64,000 bases of DNA. Origin: Saccostrea echinata. Lineage: Eukaryota. The translations under genes and the position numbers were made by a program. Positions within the stretch are counted from its first letter, which is position 1. Every line of letters begins with the position of its first letter. The notes below the pieces were generated by a model. It did no database searches. It worked only from the letters and a program-made list of their open reading frames with translations, and was not told the DNA's origin. The DNA lies in NCBI RefSeq assembly GCF_033153115.1, contig NW_026889758.1:49166001-49230000 (forward strand), written 5' to 3'. This document shows, one piece after another, positions 8,330 to 61,800 of this stretch.

Positions 8330-10316
8330 AAATACAAATACAAATACAAATATTTATTGGCACAAACACAATTACAATAATTGGCAAAGGCACAACACAT
8401 TATAAGAATCATCAATTGTTCATACATAAATATACAATATTTTAGTATAGAATATGAGGCTATACATAATTATAAATCATACATCATTTGTATAATAATT
8501 ATGTAATGCAATCATTTCTAGATACAAGACATTTTGTAATAAGTGAGTGTGTTATTTTCAGTATTTCTGGACAATGGCTATTAAAGCAAAGCTTAACTTT
8601 TTGAGTATAAGACATATTTGATATTTTTCCTTGAAAAAAAATCATCAAGTTCCTTTCAAAAGTTAACCTATGATTATTGTATTTATGGCAGCTGAATAGA
8701 AAATGAAATTCATCTTCAATCTCCCTTGTGTTGCAAATATTACAAAATCTTTTATCTGTGGGTATAGACAAATGTCTCCCTTTTTCTATGGCAAGGTTAT
8801 GTGCACTAAGTCTCAACCTGCTAATAATTGATCTCTCTGTTTTCATTTTTAATATATCAGTGTATCCACAGCATTTGAAATTATTAAAAACAACTTGATA
8901 AAATTTTAGTTTTGATGAATTATGAATCTTTGCATATTCCTCTTGTAAGCATTGATCTGATATTCTTTGTTTTATGTTTCTCAGAAGTGATTTTATTGAA
9001 TTTTCTTTTTTGGTAATGAATGAAAATCCTAACTTATTGAAAATTGAAAAAATATTTTTAGTCCATGAGTTTGTTTTGACTGTTGCTTTATAGATTTTAA
9101 ATACTAAAGTATTCTTGGAAGTAATAAGATGGTTCCAAAATTTTATACTTGAAAAATGTATTCTTGTCCACAAGGGTTGTCTACCTAAATCTGCTCTGCA
9201 GGGAGCATTAGTAGTTTTACAATGTACTCCTAAAATTTCCTTAATAAACTTCATGTGAAATTTTTCAATTATAGAATTTTCACCAATGTTATTATAAATA
9301 CCCCAGATCTCACAGCAATAAAGAAGAACTGGTGTTATAATTGAGTCAAAGAGTTTTTCCAAAAGTTTACATGGATTATCCAAACCAATGGTTTTCTTAA
9401 TCTTAAAATAGGCTTTTCTGGCCTTTTCCATAAGTACTGACATAGCTAAGTTCAGATTTCCATTACATTTCAAGGTTAATCCAAGATAACAAAATTTTGA
9501 TACTGTTTGAAGAACACTTCCATTATATGTAAACTCATTGATGCAAAATTTACCATTTGAGTTAAAAATAAGGACTTTAGACTTCTCAACATTGACCAGT
9601 AGTTTCCAATTAGAACAATATGTTTCAAGAATGTTCAAACAATTCTGTAACCCAGTTTTACTTTCAGATAATAAAACAATATCATCAGCATATAATAGAC
9701 AATTTACAGAGATTTCACCAATTTGAACAGGATCACAATTGCCTGTTTTAAGTTCATCAATAATACCATTAATAAAAATGTTGAAGAGAGATGGGCTTAA
9801 GATATCACCTTGCTTAACACCACATTCAGATGTGAATGATTTACTGAGACCATTAGCAAACTTTATCTTGGTTTTTGTATTCTCATACATAGAAAATATA
9901 ATATTGAACATATTGGTGTGTATATTGGATTTCAAAAGTTTATAATAAAGTCCAACCCTCCATATAGTGTCAAATGCTTTACGGAGATCGATAAAAGCTG
10001 CATAAACCTTTTGCTTTTTGTTTTTATAATAATCTGTTATAGTCTTAATTGTAAAAATATGATCTGATGTTCTGCTTTTTTCTTTGAAACCAATTTGATT
10101 TTCACTAATTAGTGATGCATCCTTGATAAAATCTAGCAATCTGAAATGAATAATCCTATTAAAAAGTTTTCCTAGGTTTGATGTAATGGATATACCTCTG
10201 TAATTACAAGGATCAAGTTTGTTACCCGATTTATGTAAGAGTACCAGAATACTTTCATTCCATAAAGTAGGAAATTGCCCTGAGTTCAAAATAAAGTTGA
10301 ACAGTTTTTGTAGTAA
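8330..10316 (-). mobile_element. 5'-truncated non-LTR retrotransposon (CR1/L2-group LINE)
   Basis: RT ORF, a short 3' UTR with AATAAA and a (TTTGTA)n tail at ~8330-8358. The frame stays open to ~10316, where host-element sequence resumes. No endonuclease domain is present. Confidence 0.9.
8499..10289 (-). CDS. LINE ORF2 fragment: reverse transcriptase plus C-terminal Cys/His motif
   Basis: 596 uninterrupted codons with NYRGISI, QIGF, FIDLRKAFD, GVKQGDILSP, LLYADD, YLG, and C-terminal CNIC...EDEFHFLFSC. The TTG start is only the truncation point. Confidence 0.92.
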   Translation of the reverse strand: MNSGQFPTLWNESILVLLHKSGNKLDPCNYRGISITSNLGKLFNRIIHFRLLDFIKDASLISENQIGFKEKSRTSDHIFTIKTITDYYKNKKQKVYAAFIDLRKAFDTIWRVGLYYKLLKSNIHTNMFNIIFSMYENTKTKIKFANGLSKSFTSECGVKQGDILSPSLFNIFINGIIDELKTGNCDPVQIGEISVNCLLYADDIVLLSESKTGLQNCLNILETYCSNWKLLVNVEKSKVLIFNSNGKFCINEFTYNGSVLQTVSKFCYLGLTLKCNGNLNLAMSVLMEKARKAYFKIKKTIGLDNPCKLLEKLFDSIITPVLLYCCEIWGIYNNIGENSIIEKFHMKFIKEILGVHCKTTNAPCRADLGRQPLWTRIHFSSIKFWNHLITSKNTLVFKIYKATVKTNSWTKNIFSIFNKLGFSFITKKENSIKSLLRNIKQRISDQCLQEEYAKIHNSSKLKFYQVVFNNFKCCGYTDILKMKTERSIISRLRLSAHNLAIEKGRHLSIPTDKRFCNICNTREIEDEFHFLFSCHKYNNHRLTFERNLMIFFQGKISNMSYTQKVKLCFNSHCPEILKITHSLITKCLVSRNDCIT

Positions 10317-25500: not shown

Positions 25501-28500
25501 ACAACATCATTCTGAACTAACCTGTCTAGATATTTGAAAGGACAAAATACTAATTCATACTTTGTATCCTTAAAAGCTTTGTGTAATGTGATATAAAACT
25601 TTGCTCTTTTCTTTATAAGCTCCATATCATAAAAAAATTGCTCTTACAAAATGTTTTTCAGTAGCTGAAATGTGAATAATTGGCATTCATATTGAATAAG
25701 GCATTTTTACAGATTTTTATTTCTAGAACCCAGTGGTGTAGTCATACTAAAAGATGTCTGACATTATTGATATCCATGATTATAAGAATTGATGGATACA
25801 TCCAATATAAGCATTGAGGATATATCAAATATCAGTATTGAGGACATAACCTTCACATACACAGTCAAACCTTGTTAAAATTGATGGGACCAGTAAAAAC
25901 TTAAAGATATCTGAGAATTCAAGATATTCAGATTGAAATTCAAAATAGAAGAAAAAAAGGGTTGGAACTGCCAAATATCCATGGTATTCAAGATATTGAT
26001 GTTCGAGATACCAAAGTTCATCTGTATTTTTATGTCATTTTACCTTGAGACTTGGGTCCTCTCTTTGAAGACATTCCAAGGCCAAATCAAGGTCTTTCTG
26101 ATACGCCATTGATGGTGGCTCCACTGAGCAGAAGAAAACAGGAGATGGCACCTGTAGACCAGCCAGCACCACATCATGGTTCAGGTCATCATCATGGCTA
26201 TCATCGTGTAAATCTACCTCATCTTCATGGTGCCTGTGTTCCCTTAGAATGGGTTTTATTTTAGCTAATCCTTCTTTGGAAGTAATAGTGTCACCAGTTC
26301 TGGTCTTAATTTAGAAAAAAAAAATTAAAGTAATTTCATAAAAGTGTTAAATTCATTTTTTATCATATTTCAAAAATGTGAAAATTAATTTTAATATCCA
26401 ATGATATATCCAATGATAAAATAATTTCTTTCACCAAGACAACAATTCACGACTGAATCCCCTACATTGTATCTTTGTGCCTGTTACCATTTTCAATAAT
26501 TTTTTTTAATATATTTGCAAAATCTTACCTCTTTGAGACCAGACACACAAACAATATCCCCAGGGTGTGCTGCTGATATGTTGTGATACTCATTGGCCAA
26601 AATTCTAGATAGTGTCTTCACTTTCTCATGACAATTTCTATTTATATTGTGTACATCACTCCTTTGATGCAAACTTCCTGAGTAAATCCTAAAGAAGGTC
26701 TGAGGCATTTTTTGCTGATTATGGATAGTTTTAAATGCAAATGCACAGAGTTCTGATCCATAATACTGCAAAAATGGAAATTCTCTATCATTTGGACAGG
26801 GTAGATAGTCATATATGGCATCCATTAAGAGCTGAACACCTTTGTTTTTTAAGGAAGATCCACACATAACTGGGGTAAGCTGTCTTTTAACAGTGGCATT
26901 CCTTAAAGCCTTCCTTACTAATTCTGGTTTGATTTTGTCCATACTTGTTTCTAACAGAACTTCATCTGCAATTTTTTCATCTGTGTCACTTAATCGACCA
27001 ATAAGATTTGTCCTTTCCTTTACTGCATACTCCCAAAACTTACCGTCTTCTTTCTCTGTTAAAGGTATTACTGAAAACTTCCTCCCATCTGTAGATTTTG
27101 CCAGGTCCCATTCGTATTTCACCATATCAACTATGTCCACTAGTCCTTTGAATTTTTGTAAGCTTTCACCATAAGGAAAATTGATAAGAAATGGATCAAT
27201 GTGTAATTTCTGTCTAATGGATTCTAAGCAGAGCTCAACACTGACCCCCAATTTGTCCAATTTATTGAGGTAGATGATGGAGGGGATGTCATGTTTTGTA
27301 GCTTGTTTCCACACAGTGACAGTCTGGGCTTCAACACCTACCAAAAACAAAAGATGCAGCCTCTTGAGAATTCATTAAAAAAAACGACATAATAGTATCA
27401 AAAAGATGTGTGGGAAACAATCAAGATTTTTGATAATTTTTCTTTAATAGTCTCATGTTCTTACGGTCTGATAAGTAAGAATATTTATCAAGTTGTGGGA
27501 GGAGAGTAATTAGAAAATTGGTTGAAATACAATGAATTAATTTTACTCATTTAAAACCCTAATAATACATTTATGAGCACATGTGCTTTATATGTTGACT
27601 AAGTTACATTACCAGCAGAGGCATCCAGAATGGTGACAGCTCCATCTAGAACTCTAAGAGATCTCTCCACCTCTATTGTAAAGTCCACATGTCCTGTGCA
27701 TCAACCAGAAAAAAAGACACTTGATACAAAATCTACACAATTAAACTGAGACATACAAATCTTCAGCTAATAGTTTATACTGGCAATGCTTCTATCTCTC
27801 AACATTTTGATGTCAGTCATGAAAAGTTTATGTTTGTCATTTTTATTAATTTCATTAATTAATACTAAATCTTGAAGTACAAGTCTAAATATACAAGTAC
27901 AAGCATAAATATTACCAAAATCAAAGAAATACTGATGAGACCTAGATATAGATTCATTTACATGGATCAAATGTGTCCTCTTCATTTTCAGTCGATTGTG
28001 TTAAAACATCACTAATTTTGAAAATGCATAATTGCTTACTTTGATATTTTGATTAAGATCTGACCTGGTGTATCAATGAGGTTGACTCTGTGTTTTTTCC
28101 ATTGATACGTAACAGCTGCTGATGAGATTGTTATTCCTCGGTTTCTCTCCTCCTCTAAGTAATCGGTGACTGTGTCCCCATGATCTACATCACCTGAGGA
28201 AAGTTGAAAATTACCAGCATTTAAACATGAAAAAATGTAATTCTGAATGAAAAGTTGACCAAAACTGAAAGAAAAATCCCTAGTTTTTAGGATTTTTTTC
28301 AGACTTTTTACGGTTCTTTTCAACTGTGGCGGTCAGACGAGTTCGATCGCCGGTGGCCAGATAGCTAAGTTGGTAGAGCACCTGACTGGAGATTCAGGGG
28401 GCCCAGGTTCAAATCCCAGTCTGGTCAGCTGCATTTTTCTCCTCTCCCGTTACACAACGTTGCTTTGCAAAAATTTTGAGATATGTTTTTTTTTCTTTGA

Positions 28501-58811: not shown

Positions 58812-61800
58812 ATGTCTCGTTCAAGGTTTGGTTTGCTATGCAGAAAAGTCCTCACAAATCACATGAGGTGGGTACATAATTTCAATATGATATGATAAAA
58901 TCGAAGTTTGAGTTACACGAAGACTCATTACATAATGTAAAACAATTTTAAAAAAATCTTCCACATACTTCATTGTACTTTTAACTACTTTTAAATTTTA
59001 GTTATATAATTTCTTTTGGTAAATATTTACCAGACTCTTCTGCACCACTAGAAAAGCTACTGCTAGTTCACTAGCGAGGCAGTTTAAGCTTACAGTCTCC
59101 CACTTCGCACAGGTCCTCTCTGAGAAGGTAGTATGGAGCCTTTTCAGTAATGGCAACCTATGCCATCCATGGATGTTAAGTACGTTAATGGACACAAAGT
59201 CCTTGCCCAAGATTCTTTCTTGAAGCAGGTCTCCAAACATTAGTAGAGTCAGTAATGCTGCCACCAGTGTAATGTGAAGCGATCACCCATCCAAGGGACC
59301 AGGGCTTATTCAGGTTTGCTGCATGTAGCCTAACTGGAGAGTCTACAGTGCTGCATTACTGGAAGAGCTAGCTCACTGGCTAGGCAGTATACATTCCTAT
59401 ATATTGTCCGCTACACAATCATAGATATGTCCCAATTGTTCTAATGTTTAGTAATGTGGCTTGTAATGTAGACATGTCATAAGTTAATAGAATGCCACTG
59501 CTAAATCCAATCTTTGTATCGGGAAAGGGAGAAAGTGTGTAAGATCAGATCGGGATTCGAACCTGCATTCCCTGAACTCTAGACAATTGCTTTACCAACT
59601 GAGCTACTTGGCTATTCATGATCAAAACCTGCCTGAGTGACCACCACCATCCTCTCTCCCTAAATGTCTGTCCTTGAAGACACACACGCAGGGTCTTCCC
59701 CAGCAGGTCTTTTGCCTGTCACTTCCAGGGCATTGCATAGCACCAAATGTAACAGAGAAGGAGGAATAAATGAACACATAATGAAAAGTTATGGTTTTAA
59801 CTAGAATTGAACCAGGGACCCCTGCATTACTATTCAGGTGCTATGCCACTTTACCATTAAGGCAAATATCCATGGTACCATAAATACTGTGGAATCATCA
59901 ATGTTCATGGGGGATCAATGTTTGTGGATATCGTAGGTCACCCTTACGAATTTACATCCCCACAAATAACTATTTTGTCAATGGATATCGTGGGTCACCC
60001 TTATCCACAAATTTACATCCCCACAAATAACTATTTTGTCAATGTATTTATTCAGTGAACTTTTGTATACCGTATACAAGTTACCCATAAAATTATGTCC
60101 CCACGAACCAACAAAATTTTACTTACCCACAAACATTGACCCCCCACAAATTGAAATGATTCCACAGTATAGCCTAACTTACAACATCTGTTATACAGTA
60201 CTTATAAAAGTTTAAAAATTTATATCCTTTAATTTTGTTAAAGGTGGGCTATAATGGTCAAAGCCAAAACTCGATCATTATTTATATTACAACACACCAA
60301 AGTTTATCTTCGTGTGTGTGAGGCAGGTGTGTGCAAGGCAGGTGTGTGCACTACTGGGCAAATAACACGGTTGGTAGAGCATTGTCTAGAGTTCAGTTAG
60401 CCCGGAGTTCAAATCCTGGTCTTGTTGATTGCATTTTCTCCAGTTACATGTGTGGCGGTCTTCGGGTTTAATCGGCAGTGGTCAAATAGCTTTGATATAC
60501 CCGGTAGCACCTGACTGGAGATTCAGGGGGCCCGGTTTTGAATCCCGATCTGGTCTGTCACATTTTTCTCCTCTCGTGTGACATTTTATGTGCCATGCCC
60601 TGGAAGTGACAGATGAAAGACCTGTCAGTGAAGAGCCTGGGTTGGTGTCTTTGCGGTCAAAGACTTTTAAGGAGGGAGGAATTTGGTGGTCAGATGGGTT
60701 CAATCGCTGGTGGGCAGATAGCTCAGTTGGTAGAGCACCTGACTGGAGATTCAGGGGGCCCGGGATTGAATCCTGGACTGGTCCATCACATTTTTCTTCT
60801 CTCCTGTTACACATGTGGTGATGTGACCATGCCCAGGAAGTGACAGGTCTGTGAGGGATAAACCTAGATTGATATATTCAGTGAGCAAATATATGGGGGG
60901 GGGGGGGGGAATGCAGTAGGCAGGCAGGTTTGTCATTAGATGCTAAGATAGCACCTATCTAGATTTATGGTGCACATGATTAAAACGTTATGTATCTTAT
61001 TTATCCATTAGTAGTCATTTAGTGGATCTTTAGGAATATGGAAATAGTAAAAGATACTTATCTATTGCATTTGATTGAAACAATTCTCATTTTATAAAGG
61101 TAACACAGTATAAATCAAATCCAAAATCTTATGCAACAATACAACAGTGTATATTGTTATATTAACTACATTGTCAAGGAATATTTTATTCTGATCAGTC
61201 TTTCAAGAGAAATATTAAGAAATCGAAGAAATTGTAACAAAATTTATTGAAGGTCTTTTTACATCTCTATTTGTAGGAGGTGTGCCCGATGGGATCAGTC
61301 AAGTGCAGCCAACGTGGCCAAAGTGACCCTGAATCAGTTAAGTGATCACCTGGAGGACCAGATCATGATTAAAACCATCAGTAAATCAAGCTTTGTTCTA
61401 CACAATGACAATATCAGGATTATAGGACCCACAGTGTTCTTCCCAAGAGAGGTTCTACACTGGAATGTATGTTGCTAATTCTTGATTTTGATGTTTGATA
61501 TGTAAATTTACAATGTTTATGTTAGAATTCAACAAAGAGGGTATTGTAAAGGGTGTGATCCAATCCAGCAACATGCCTGACTTTCAAAAATTCATATAAA
61601 CACATATATTGATTTACTTTTCATTGTCTTTATTCTTAATTAAGATATTTTACCATTTCTGTATTGCATATATTATAAGGAAGCATTTACTAGTTTGTGG
61701 TAATCTTATATGACTGAATTAATTTTTTTTAAATATATTACAAATATAAAATATTTGTGATTTTTTTCTTTGACAGGTTAAAGGTATTGAGGATATAAAT

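What the first reader, a model, noticed from the sequence alone, without database searches (positions are those of the whole stretch)
60451..60811. Miniature LTR retroelement whose LTRs carry a tRNA-like Pol III cassette
Seen: this 361-bp unit first looks like two tRNA/SINE copies, but it has LTR anatomy. Two ~130-bp direct repeats (TGT...ACA; LTR2 starts TTT) flank a 98-bp non-coding middle, a purine tract abuts LTR2, and CATG is duplicated on both sides. Each LTR holds a tRNA-like cassette (in LTR2: TAGCTCAGTTGGTAGAGC A-box/D-arm and a GGATTGAATCC B-box variant). Established: TRIMs with small-RNA-derived LTRs exist (Cassandra, 5S rRNA). As I recall, tRNA-bearing ones were named Helenus and make 4-bp TSDs in animals. 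Inference: a Pol III-driven parasite mobilised by an autonomous LTR element. Standard pipelines would mislabel it as SINE or tRNA pseudogenes.
Basis: partly seen in the sequence, partly recalled or inferred. Interest (0 to 1): 0.8.

Follow-up and report, generated by a model that had tools for sequence, protein, structure and literature searches.

The report
Old Helenus tRNA-LTR mini-retrotransposon, oyster
This is a real but long-dead copy of a 361-bp non-coding LTR retrotransposon whose repeats carry a tRNA look-alike; it belongs to the Helenus group described in 2024, so it is ordinary, although the same genome holds young copies and a likely helper element.

Summary
Window 60451-60811 is LTR (133 bp), 98-bp internal part and LTR (130 bp), with TGT..ACA ends, a purine tract against the 3' LTR and CATG on both sides.

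Genome-wide the family behaves as an LTR element, not a SINE. Of 18 unique complete copies, 15 have perfect 4-bp target duplications. The primer site is complementary to the host's own tRNA-His. Young copies have 93-100% identical LTR pairs; the window copy has 81%.

A roughly 9-kb Gypsy element with open gag and pol frames shares the tRNA-His primer site, the LTR ends and 20 of 21 bases at the purine-tract/LTR junction. It is the best helper candidate.

The host is an ostreid oyster. Helenus elements with 4-bp duplications, tRNA-His primers and Gypsy partners were described in oysters by Kojima 2024 (PMC10886601).

Pol III transcription remains inferred. A T5 terminator in the 5' LTR is an unresolved difficulty.

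The scan reached the same verdict before on other pieces of this genome (s1-820161, s1-812203).

The parts
60447..60450 (+). Left copy of the 4-bp target-site duplication, CATG. It is also the last two bases (CA) of the host element's LTR plus its 2-nt spacer.
60451..60583 (+). 5' LTR (LTR1) of the focal element, 133 bp, TGTGG...ACA. Its tRNA-like part at 60480-60556 has decayed. T5 run at 60563-60567.
   Evidence: (20.9 bits)
60584..60681 (+). Internal part, 98 bp, non-coding. It is 90.8% identical to the internal part of a young copy. The PBS remnant at about 60586-60595 carries a 3-nt deletion.
60669..60681 (+). Polypurine tract AAGGAGGGAGGAA, abutting the 3' LTR.
60682..60811 (+). 3' LTR (LTR2), 130 bp, TTTGG...TTACA. 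It holds the tRNA-like part at 60712-60784, an A box at 60719-60730, a B-box variant at 60763-60773 and a T5 run at 60791-60795.
   Evidence: (38.3 bits)
60812..60815 (+). Right copy of the 4-bp target-site duplication, CATG.
60328..60448 (+). 5' LTR ('LTR0') of an older, related host element B. It ends TTACA at 60448. Its start is uncertain (about 60308-60336) because of a 15-bp tandem duplication.
60816..60911 (+). Internal part of host element B. It runs from a PBS-like start (12 of the first 14 bases match the tRNA-His complement) to a G-rich purine run. It is only 68.8% identical to a young internal part.
60912..60990 (+). Decayed start of host element B's 3' LTR. The end point is approximate.
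59515..59880 (-). A separate old copy of a related subfamily: part of an LTR, an internal part with PBS and PPT, and a 3' LTR ending GATACA. About 73% identical to a young copy.
28325..28454 (+). Solo LTR of the same family, 95% identical to a young LTR, flanked by CAAC on both sides.

Best explanation
The 361-bp unit is an old, inactive copy of a Helenus-type TRIM. That is a non-coding miniature LTR retrotransposon whose 130-bp LTRs consist of a 30-nt leader, a 73-nt tRNA look-alike with A and B boxes, a T5 run and a 16-nt tail ending CA.

Shown here:
- It inserted, making a 4-bp CATG duplication, into an older related element, exactly between that element's LTR and its primer-binding site.
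- The family is interspersed. Young members have identical LTR pairs.
- The PBS is complementary to the host tRNA-His 3' end.
- The PPT abuts the 3' LTR.

Inferred:
- The RNA starts at the tRNA-like promoter in the 5' LTR, made by RNA polymerase III. It reads through that LTR's T5 run and ends at the T5 run of the 3' LTR, so the tRNA-like segment serves as R.
- It is packaged and reverse-transcribed from a tRNA-His primer by the proteins of an autonomous Gypsy element.
- It is integrated by that element's integrase, which sets the 4-bp duplication.

The best helper candidate is a roughly 9-kb Gypsy family ('X') in the same genome.
For: Anatomy and flanks:
- Anatomy of the window copy.
- Of the 29 non-window loci fetched, 19 hold an LTR-internal-LTR chain, 6 hold LTR-I-LTR-I-LTR and 4 are other or complex.
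- 15 of 18 unique complete elements have perfect 4-bp duplications; none match at the 3-, 5- or 6-base widths tested. The focal copy has CATG/CATG and the solo LTR has CAAC/CAAC.

Age:
- LTR pairs are 93.0-100% identical in 16 young copies, 3 of them at 100%. The window copy is at 81.1%, K2P 0.22.

Nesting:
- The inner internal part is 90.8% identical to a young internal part; the downstream one is 68.8%.
- The upstream LTR0 and the downstream remnant resemble the old subfamily copy at 59515-59880.
- Removing the insert and one CATG restores 'ACA + 2 nt + TGG', the family's LTR-PBS spacing.

Primer:
- A host tRNA-His(GTG) gene lies at L034:1451-1522.
- PBS complementarity is 10-14 nt in most copies and the full 18 nt in L032, L059 and L061.
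- The 18-mer occurs 92 times in the genome, against 0 for the reversed control.

tRNA look-alike:
- Rfam tRNA scores 56-62.6 bits in 6 of 6 young LTRs.
- The minimum-energy fold of a young LTR is a cloverleaf with an 8-nt anticodon loop.
- The A box is exact in 29 of 32 young LTRs and the B box in 24 of 32. The only T runs of 4 or more in 16 of 16 young elements are one T5 per LTR.

Helper:
- LTR pairs are 99.0-99.8% identical over about 1.2 kb in 3 copies.
- Open frames of 443 aa and 1295/1296 aa are present in 2 of the 2 copies checked.
- Pfam gives protease, RT, RNase H and integrase in Gypsy order.
- The LTR runs TGTGGTG/TGTAGTG ... GGTTACA, the tRNA-His PBS is the full 18 nt, and the PPT/LTR junction matches 20 of 21 bases.

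Literature:
- Kojima 2024, PMC10886601.
Against: - There is no transcript, start-site or Pol III occupancy evidence. Read laying placed only pieces of other repeat copies on the element and nothing specific to this locus. No listed run is on record as RNA.
- The T5 run lies 6 nt after the tRNA-like part in the 5' LTR. A standard Pol III terminator there would stop transcription before the PBS, so read-through has to be assumed.
- Gypsy X has 7 nt between its LTR end and PBS, against 2 nt in this family.
- Only 1 of 3 X copies examined shows a clean 4-bp duplication: L065 TATG/TATG, L066 3 of 4 bases, L067 unclear.
- A second Gypsy family (L072) also has a tRNA-His PBS and a similar purine tract, so the helper is not uniquely identified.
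- Three of 18 complete copies lack a perfect duplication: L004 has 3 of 4 bases, and L002 and L014 abut other copies.
Confidence: 0.85

Rival explanations
1. Head-to-tail copies of a tRNA-derived SINE (a tandem SINE array), not an LTR element. This was my own first guess.
For: Three tRNA-like units lie in a row (60355-60448, 60451-60583, 60682-60811). The direct repeat runs past the proposed end of LTR2.
Against: Genome copies begin and end precisely at LTR ends, with 4-bp duplications in 15 of 18 unique elements. They have no A-rich or simple-repeat tail. About 30 nt lie upstream of the tRNA-like part inside the repeat. A tRNA-His PBS and a PPT sit at the LTR borders. The run-on past LTR2 is explained by the older host element.
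Confidence: 0.02
2. The local structure is one tandem array (LTR-I-LTR-I-LTR, as seen elsewhere in the genome), not a younger element nested in an older one. On this reading CATG is not a target duplication.
For: Arrays with three LTRs occur in 6 of the 29 other loci. Kojima reports tandem arrays for the zebrafish family LTR-11_DR. Internal-like sequence follows LTR2.
Against: The two internal parts differ greatly in decay: 90.8% against 68.8% identity to a young copy. LTR0 abuts LTR1 with no internal part between them. A 4-nt spacer between LTR2 and the TGG of the PBS would be needed, whereas the family has 2 nt. LTR0 and the downstream remnant carry the anticodon-arm variant of the old subfamily.
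Confidence: 0.08
3. A cluster of decayed tRNA genes or pseudogenes.
For: Rfam tRNA hit above the gathering score in LTR2. ARAGORN calls the solo LTR at 28354-28429 a tRNA of undetermined type.
Against: The anticodon loop has 8 nt and no isotype is assigned in 4 of 6 young LTRs. The tRNA-like part is always embedded in the same 130-bp LTR, with a PBS and PPT between pairs. There are hundreds to thousands of interspersed copies.
Confidence: 0.01

Closest known systems
Helenus (tRNA-LTR TRIMs; 'TRIMp3'), Kojima 2024, Biology 13:119, PMC10886601; bivalve families including Ostreidae
   Same: Two short LTRs carry a tRNA-derived segment with conserved A and B boxes. A PBS lies just after the 5' LTR and a PPT just before the 3' LTR. 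Animals show 4-bp TSDs. The 362-bp length falls within the reported 311-1263 bp. A tRNA-His PBS is reported among bivalve families, and a Gypsy partner is inferred.
   Different: I could not compare sequences with the named Repbase families, because the supplements were closed and Repbase was not available. The host is not C. gigas or C. virginica: their best matches to a window protein are only 36-44% identical. It may be a species not in the paper's Table 1. The paper reports only PBS-level similarity to Gypsy for animals; here the candidate helper also shares the LTR ends and the PPT/LTR junction.
LTR-11_DR, the zebrafish Helenus family (named in PMC10886601)
   Same: High copy number, and tandem LTR-internal-LTR-internal-LTR arrays (arrays here).
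   Different: A different host phylum. No sequence comparison was possible.
Cassandra (plant TRIM with 5S rRNA in its LTRs), as described in PMC10886601
   Same: A small-RNA gene with an internal Pol III promoter is embedded in both LTRs of a TRIM.
   Different: 5S rRNA rather than tRNA, in plants. According to the paper, Pol III transcripts were shown experimentally for Cassandra; none is shown here.
tRNA-derived SINEs (SINE2)
   Same: A tRNA-like head with A and B boxes, short length, high copy number, and likely mislabelling by tRNA and SINE finders.
   Different: SINEs begin at the tRNA head, end in a tail, use LINE machinery and make variable-length TSDs. Here there are LTRs, a PBS, a PPT, TG..CA ends and fixed 4-bp TSDs.
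Gypsy-39_CGi (a C. gigas Gypsy named in PMC10886601 as using tRNA-His)
   Same: Gypsy X here also uses an 18-nt tRNA-His PBS and is an oyster Gypsy element.
   Different: No sequence of Gypsy-39_CGi was available, so the relationship is untested.

Membership tests
Helenus (Kojima 2024) | Short non-autonomous LTR retrotransposon (TRIM): two LTRs, a short internal part, no coding capacity | tested here: met
   The focal copy is 133 + 98 + 130 bp. Young copies are 357-363 bp. Stop-free stretches differ in strand and frame between copies, so there is no conserved frame.
Helenus (Kojima 2024) | tRNA-derived sequence with A and B boxes inside the LTRs | tested here: met
   Rfam tRNA scores 38.3 bits (LTR2) and 20.9 bits (LTR1) in the window, and 56-62.6 bits in 6 of 6 young LTRs. 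The A box is exact in 29 of 32 young LTRs and the B box in 24 of 32.
Helenus (Kojima 2024) | PBS complementary to a tRNA just downstream of the 5' LTR | tested here: met
   Family copies carry 10-18 nt complementary to the 3' end (plus CCA) of the host tRNA-His gene at L034:1451-1522. In the focal copy the PBS has decayed, with a 3-nt deletion.
Helenus (Kojima 2024) | PPT just upstream of the 3' LTR | tested here: met
   AAGGAGGGAGGAA at 60669-60681, present in 16 of 16 young copies with at most 1 change.
Helenus (Kojima 2024) | 4-bp TSD (animal Helenus) | tested here: met
   15 of 18 unique complete copies. The focal copy has CATG and the solo LTR has CAAC.
Helenus (Kojima 2024) | Mobilised by an autonomous Gypsy element | tested here: inconclusive
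   Candidate Gypsy X shares the PBS (18 nt), the LTR ends and 20 of 21 bases at the PPT/LTR junction. However, its spacer is 7 nt against 2 nt, and a second family (L072) is also similar. No functional test was done.
Helenus / TRIMp3 | Transcription from the internal Pol III promoter | not testable with these tools
   No RNA run is on record for this stretch. The contigs laid were pieces of other repeat copies. The paper itself says this is unvalidated for Helenus.
tRNA-derived SINE | Element starts at the tRNA head, has a 3' tail and variable-length TSDs | tested here: not met
   A 30-nt leader precedes the tRNA-like part. There are LTR ends, no tail and fixed 4-bp TSDs.
Cassandra | 5S rRNA-derived sequence in the LTRs | tested here: not met
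   The Rfam scan of 59500-61800 at E up to 10 gives tRNA hits and no 5S rRNA hit.

The most novel reading that the evidence does not exclude
This oyster genome may hold a currently active parasite-helper pair. Young Helenus copies have identical LTRs. A Gypsy family has near-identical 1.2-kb LTRs and open gag and pol frames. The two share the U5 end, the 18-nt tRNA-His PBS and a 21-nt PPT/U3 junction. That would be the first concrete helper assignment for an animal tRNA-promoter TRIM.

In addition, some Helenus-like copies carry 25-38 nt of tRNA-His complement at the PBS. Three of these runs end exactly before tRNA position 37, and the standard 18-nt PBS ends before position 58. This pattern looks like a genomic record of plus-strand synthesis running past the usual stop in the primer tRNA to the next blocking base.
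Probability: 0.45. Interest if true: 0.45.

Novelty: new member of a known kind. Interest (0 to 1): 0.25.

Why it matters
The focal copy itself matters little. It is a decayed member of a group published in 2024 for oysters and other bivalves.

Its practical value is for annotation. Rfam and ARAGORN score these LTRs as tRNAs, so tRNA and SINE counts in oyster genomes will be inflated unless the family is masked as an LTR element.

The side results are more useful:
- A tidy nested insertion dates two waves of the family.
- The candidate Gypsy helper shares the sequences that reverse transcriptase and integrase act on.
- The extended tRNA-His primer copies give a testable handle on how these elements are copied.

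Tried and rejected
**Tandem-SINE reading.** I first read the locus as tandem tRNA-derived SINE copies, at 70% odds as stated, because the repeat runs past LTR2. I rejected this after the genome-wide copies showed LTR architecture and 4-bp duplications.

**Host species.** Run and organism names are coded, so I inferred only the family. I searched with a window ORF: the best named hit was Saccostrea cucullata at 65% identity, and Crassostrea hits were 36-44%. The species stays undetermined. An Ostrea-like or Saccostrea-like oyster is my inference.

**Expression.** The look-up of sequencing runs found 9 runs, all with small shares, and none is on record as RNA. Read laying on 59400-61400 with 4 runs placed only pieces 88-95% alike, from other repeat copies, on the element. 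Nothing bridged its flanks. Only 61275-61400 was held exactly. So this told nothing about transcription or about presence/absence of this insertion.

**Other helper candidates.** L069 has no ORF of 200 aa or more. L072 has four broken ORFs and a similar but less close PPT and LTR start. L070 and L071 have different ends.

**Further checks.**
- Internal similarity between Helenus and Gypsy X beyond the junctions: none above chance.
- Fold z-scores of the tRNA-like parts are unremarkable (-1.46 to 0.93). The case for tRNA likeness rests on the covariance-model scores.
- Literature: the terms Helenus + LTR retrotransposon + tRNA found 4 papers, 3 listed. Helenus + TRIM + retrotransposon found 4 papers, 3 listed. 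Only PMC10886601 treats the group. I saw the other two as listings only. A search on the primer stop at m1A58 was seen as a listing and abstract starts only.
- Supplements of PMC10886601 (Table S1, Figure S2C) were not seen. They may list this very family or species.
Full report
**Observation.**
- There is a 133-bp repeat (60451-60583, TGTGG...ACA), a 98-bp middle (60584-60681) and a 130-bp repeat (60682-60811, TTTGG...TTACA).
- A purine tract, AAGGAGGGAGGAA, lies at 60669-60681, directly against the second repeat.
- CATG lies on both sides, at 60447-60450 and 60812-60815.
- The two repeats align at 103 of 127 paired positions (81.1%, 9 gap columns, K2P 0.22).
- On the Rfam tRNA model the second repeat scores 38.3 bits (gathering score 29) and the first 20.9 bits. 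ARAGORN calls neither.
- The first repeat has lost its D arm: 5 of 12 A-box positions differ from young copies and it no longer folds as a cloverleaf.

- A third, more decayed LTR-like unit ends with TTACA at 60448, two bases before the focal element.
- After the right-hand CATG the sequence continues, from 60816, with internal-like sequence, a long G run and a decayed LTR start.
- Because the repeat seemed to run past the proposed LTR end, I first favoured tandem SINE copies.

**Genome-wide test.** The window is part of a 923-Mb assembly in 425 contigs. A 221-base query (LTR2 plus what follows it) gave 89 scored matches and 1363 first-look candidates. I mapped the LTR and the internal part onto the 30 fetched loci.
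- Among the 29 loci other than the window, 19 hold an LTR-internal-LTR chain, 6 hold LTR-I-LTR-I-LTR and 4 are other or complex.
- Twenty-one elements have both outer LTR ends. Twenty start TGTGG (L013 starts TGTGA) and all end TTACA.
- Three are duplicates by their flanks (L013 and L021 of L012; L027 of L007), which leaves 18 unique elements.
- Fifteen of the 18 have identical 4-bp flanks. None matches at widths 3, 5 or 6. L004 has 3 of 4 bases in a TA-rich repeat. L002 and L014 abut other copies.
- Eight loci with truncated or complex ends (L006, L008, L016, L018, L022, L023, L025, L026) and the window's own locus L001 were left out of this count.
- No copy has a SINE-type tail.

**Anatomy of the family.** Young elements are 357-363 bp, with a 130-bp LTR and an internal part of about 102 bp.
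- The LTR has a 30-nt leader starting TGTGGCGG and a 73-nt tRNA look-alike at LTR positions 31-103.
- One T5 run follows at about positions 110-114, and the tail ends CCCGTTACA.
- The look-alike scores 56-62.6 bits on Rfam tRNA in 6 of 6 LTRs tested.
- Its minimum-energy fold is a clean cloverleaf, but with an 8-nt anticodon loop.
- ARAGORN assigns no isotype in 4 of 6 LTRs and Ser(GGA) in 2.
- The A box is exact in 29 of 32 young LTRs and the B box in 24 of 32.
- In 16 of 16 young elements the only T runs of 4 or more are the one T5 per LTR.
- The elements have no conserved reading frame.

**Primer site.** The internal part begins with TT and then a word complementary to a tRNA 3' end.
- A pattern search found 16 places (9 exact). 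One locus checked with ARAGORN, L034:1451-1522, holds a tRNA-His(GTG) gene.
- Read against that gene plus CCA, the PBS match is 10 nt in most copies, 14 nt in L004 and the full 18 nt in L032, L059 and L061.
- The 18-mer occurs 92 times in the genome, against 0 for the reversed control.
- In the focal copy the PBS has a 3-nt deletion.
- The host element's PBS at 60816 matches 12 of the first 14 bases.

**Nested insertion.**
- The inner internal part (60584-60681) is 90.8% identical to a young internal part. The downstream one (60812-60911) is 68.8% identical and resembles, at 72.5%, the internal part of another old copy on the minus strand at 59515-59880.
- The upstream LTR0 shares that old copy's anticodon-arm variant. 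The sequence after the G run aligns with the start of the old copy's LTR.
- Taking out 60451-60811 and one CATG leaves 'TTACA + TG + TGGTG...', the family's normal LTR, 2-nt spacer and PBS arrangement.
- The focal element therefore inserted into an older relative at its LTR/PBS border, and CATG is a true target duplication.
- The rival reading, one tandem array, needs an odd 4-nt spacer, does not explain LTR0 lying directly against LTR1, and does not fit the unequal decay. I give it 0.08.

**Age.** LTR pairs of the 16 young copies are 93.0-100% identical (3 at 100%), and copies differ from each other by a median of 4.7%. The focal copy's LTRs are 81.1% identical, and the copy is a median 84% identical to the young ones. 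It has extra T4 runs and broken boxes. It is old and dead, while the family has been active recently.

**Other members in the window.** The window also holds a solo LTR at 28325-28454 (95% identical to a young LTR, flanked by CAAC) and the old minus-strand copy at 59515-59880.

**Helper candidate.** I examined 30 of the 92 sites with the exact 18-nt tRNA-His PBS.
- Seven belong to one family, here called X, and at least nine have tRNA-like LTRs upstream.
- For three X copies the LTR pairs are 99.0-99.8% identical over about 1.2 kb, about 6.3-6.6 kb apart.
- Two of two copies checked have open frames of 443 aa and 1295/1296 aa.
- Pfam finds aspartyl protease, RVT_1, RNase H, the integrase zinc domain, rve and the integrase C-terminal domain, in Gypsy order. 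The 443-aa frame has only weak Gag-like hits (PNMA, SCAN; both below the curated cut-off).
- X's LTR starts TGTGGTG or TGTAGTG and ends CCGGTTACA. Its PPT/LTR junction is identical to Helenus at 20 of 21 bases. Its U5 end and PBS align with a 5-nt gap.
- The degenerate 21-mer occurs 220 times, against 0 for the control. Of the first 100 listed, 11 are the X variant and 89 the Helenus variant.

Points against the pairing:
- X has 7 nt between its LTR and PBS, against 2 nt in this family. Other Helenus-like families here have 5-6 nt of the same spacer.
- Only 1 of 3 X copies shows a clean 4-bp duplication.
- A second, broken Gypsy (L072) has a similar but less close PPT.

X is the best candidate, not a proven helper. 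I describe these copies only: I built no consensus and single out no copy.

**How it most likely works.**
- Shown: LTR anatomy, 4-bp duplications, a tRNA-His PBS, a PPT, recent activity and nesting.
- Inferred: Pol III starts at the tRNA-like promoter in the 5' LTR, reads through that LTR's T5 run and ends at the T5 run of the 3' LTR. R is then the tRNA-like segment, U3 the 30-nt leader and U5 the 16-nt tail.
- Inferred: the RNA is packaged by the helper's Gag, primed by tRNA-His, and integrated by the helper's integrase.
- The T5 run in the 5' LTR is a real difficulty for this model. The published description also states that Pol III activity is unvalidated for Helenus.
- I could get no RNA evidence.

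**Comparison with what is known.** Kojima 2024 (PMC10886601) was read as abstract, the Results and Discussion sections, and figure legends and tables.
- It defines Helenus as TRIMs with tRNA-derived LTR sequence, a PBS and a PPT, with 4-bp TSDs in animals.
- It reports them from five orders of pteriomorph bivalves, including the ostreids C. gigas, C. virginica and S. glomerata, with tRNA-His among the bivalve primers and Gypsy partners inferred from PBS similarity.
- Every defining feature that I could test is met.

**Host.** The host here is an ostreid oyster. A 798-aa window ORF has its best named relative in Saccostrea cucullata (65%), and Crassostrea relatives at 36-44%. So it is not C. 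gigas or C. virginica; the species is undetermined. Earlier notes of this scan on other pieces of the same genome reached the same verdict.

**Verdict.** It is probably an unlisted member in another oyster. The focal copy is a dead, nested relic. Interest is 0.25.

**Side observation.** Six Helenus-like or related copies carry 25-38 nt of tRNA-His complement at the PBS.
- Three (L063, L074, L076) end exactly at 38 nt, just before tRNA position 37.
- The ordinary 18-nt PBS ends just before position 58.
- That positions 58 and 37 carry reverse-transcriptase-blocking methyl groups is recalled knowledge for position 37. For position 58 I saw only the abstract start of PMC8599865.

Noticed in passing
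L063:1501-1538, L074:393-430, L076:352-389, L032:1498-1533, L073:361-390, L075:366-390: Helenus-like or related copies whose PBS region holds 25-38 nt complementary to the host tRNA-His instead of 18. Three end exactly before tRNA position 37. They look like records of plus-strand synthesis copying the primer tRNA past the usual stop. After the tRNA-derived part each continues with different sequence, so they may be independent events or separate families.
   Followed up: partly
L065, L066, L067 (with L051, L056, L035): A roughly 9-kb Gypsy family with 99.0-99.8% identical 1.2-kb LTRs, open 443-aa and about 1295-aa frames, an 18-nt tRNA-His PBS set 7 nt from the LTR end, and a PPT/LTR junction 20 of 21 bases identical to the Helenus family.
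   Followed up: partly
window 28325-28454: Solo LTR of the same family, 95% identical to a young LTR, with a CAAC duplication. ARAGORN calls it a tRNA of undetermined type. It lies about 1 kb from an EF-G (GFM2-like) exon at 26493-27350 on the minus strand.
   Followed up: yes
window 59885-60170: A different high-copy repeat, with a 61-bp unit repeated twice at 59925-60044. Many contigs from all four runs pile up here, with varied internal deletions.
   Followed up: no
window 61275-61400: Held without any difference by contigs of 1.3-1.5 kb in three runs guessed to be RNA and by a 206-base contig in the run guessed to be DNA, including the one labelled as a second organism. It may be an exon or another conserved piece, and 'organism B' must be very close to the host.
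   Followed up: no
window 8499-10289 (-): A 596-aa ORF with a reverse-transcriptase domain (RVT_1, E 9e-42), so another retroelement lies in the window.
   Followed up: no
L012, L013, L021 (contigs C77, C75, C75); L007, L027 (C46): The same Helenus insertions, with the same flanks and duplications, occur at two or three places. These are segmental duplications or uncollapsed haplotypes in the assembly.
   Followed up: no
window 37573-39969 (-): A 798-aa ORF with no Pfam domain. Relatives are found only in oysters (Saccostrea cucullata 65%, Crassostrea 36-44%).
   Followed up: partly
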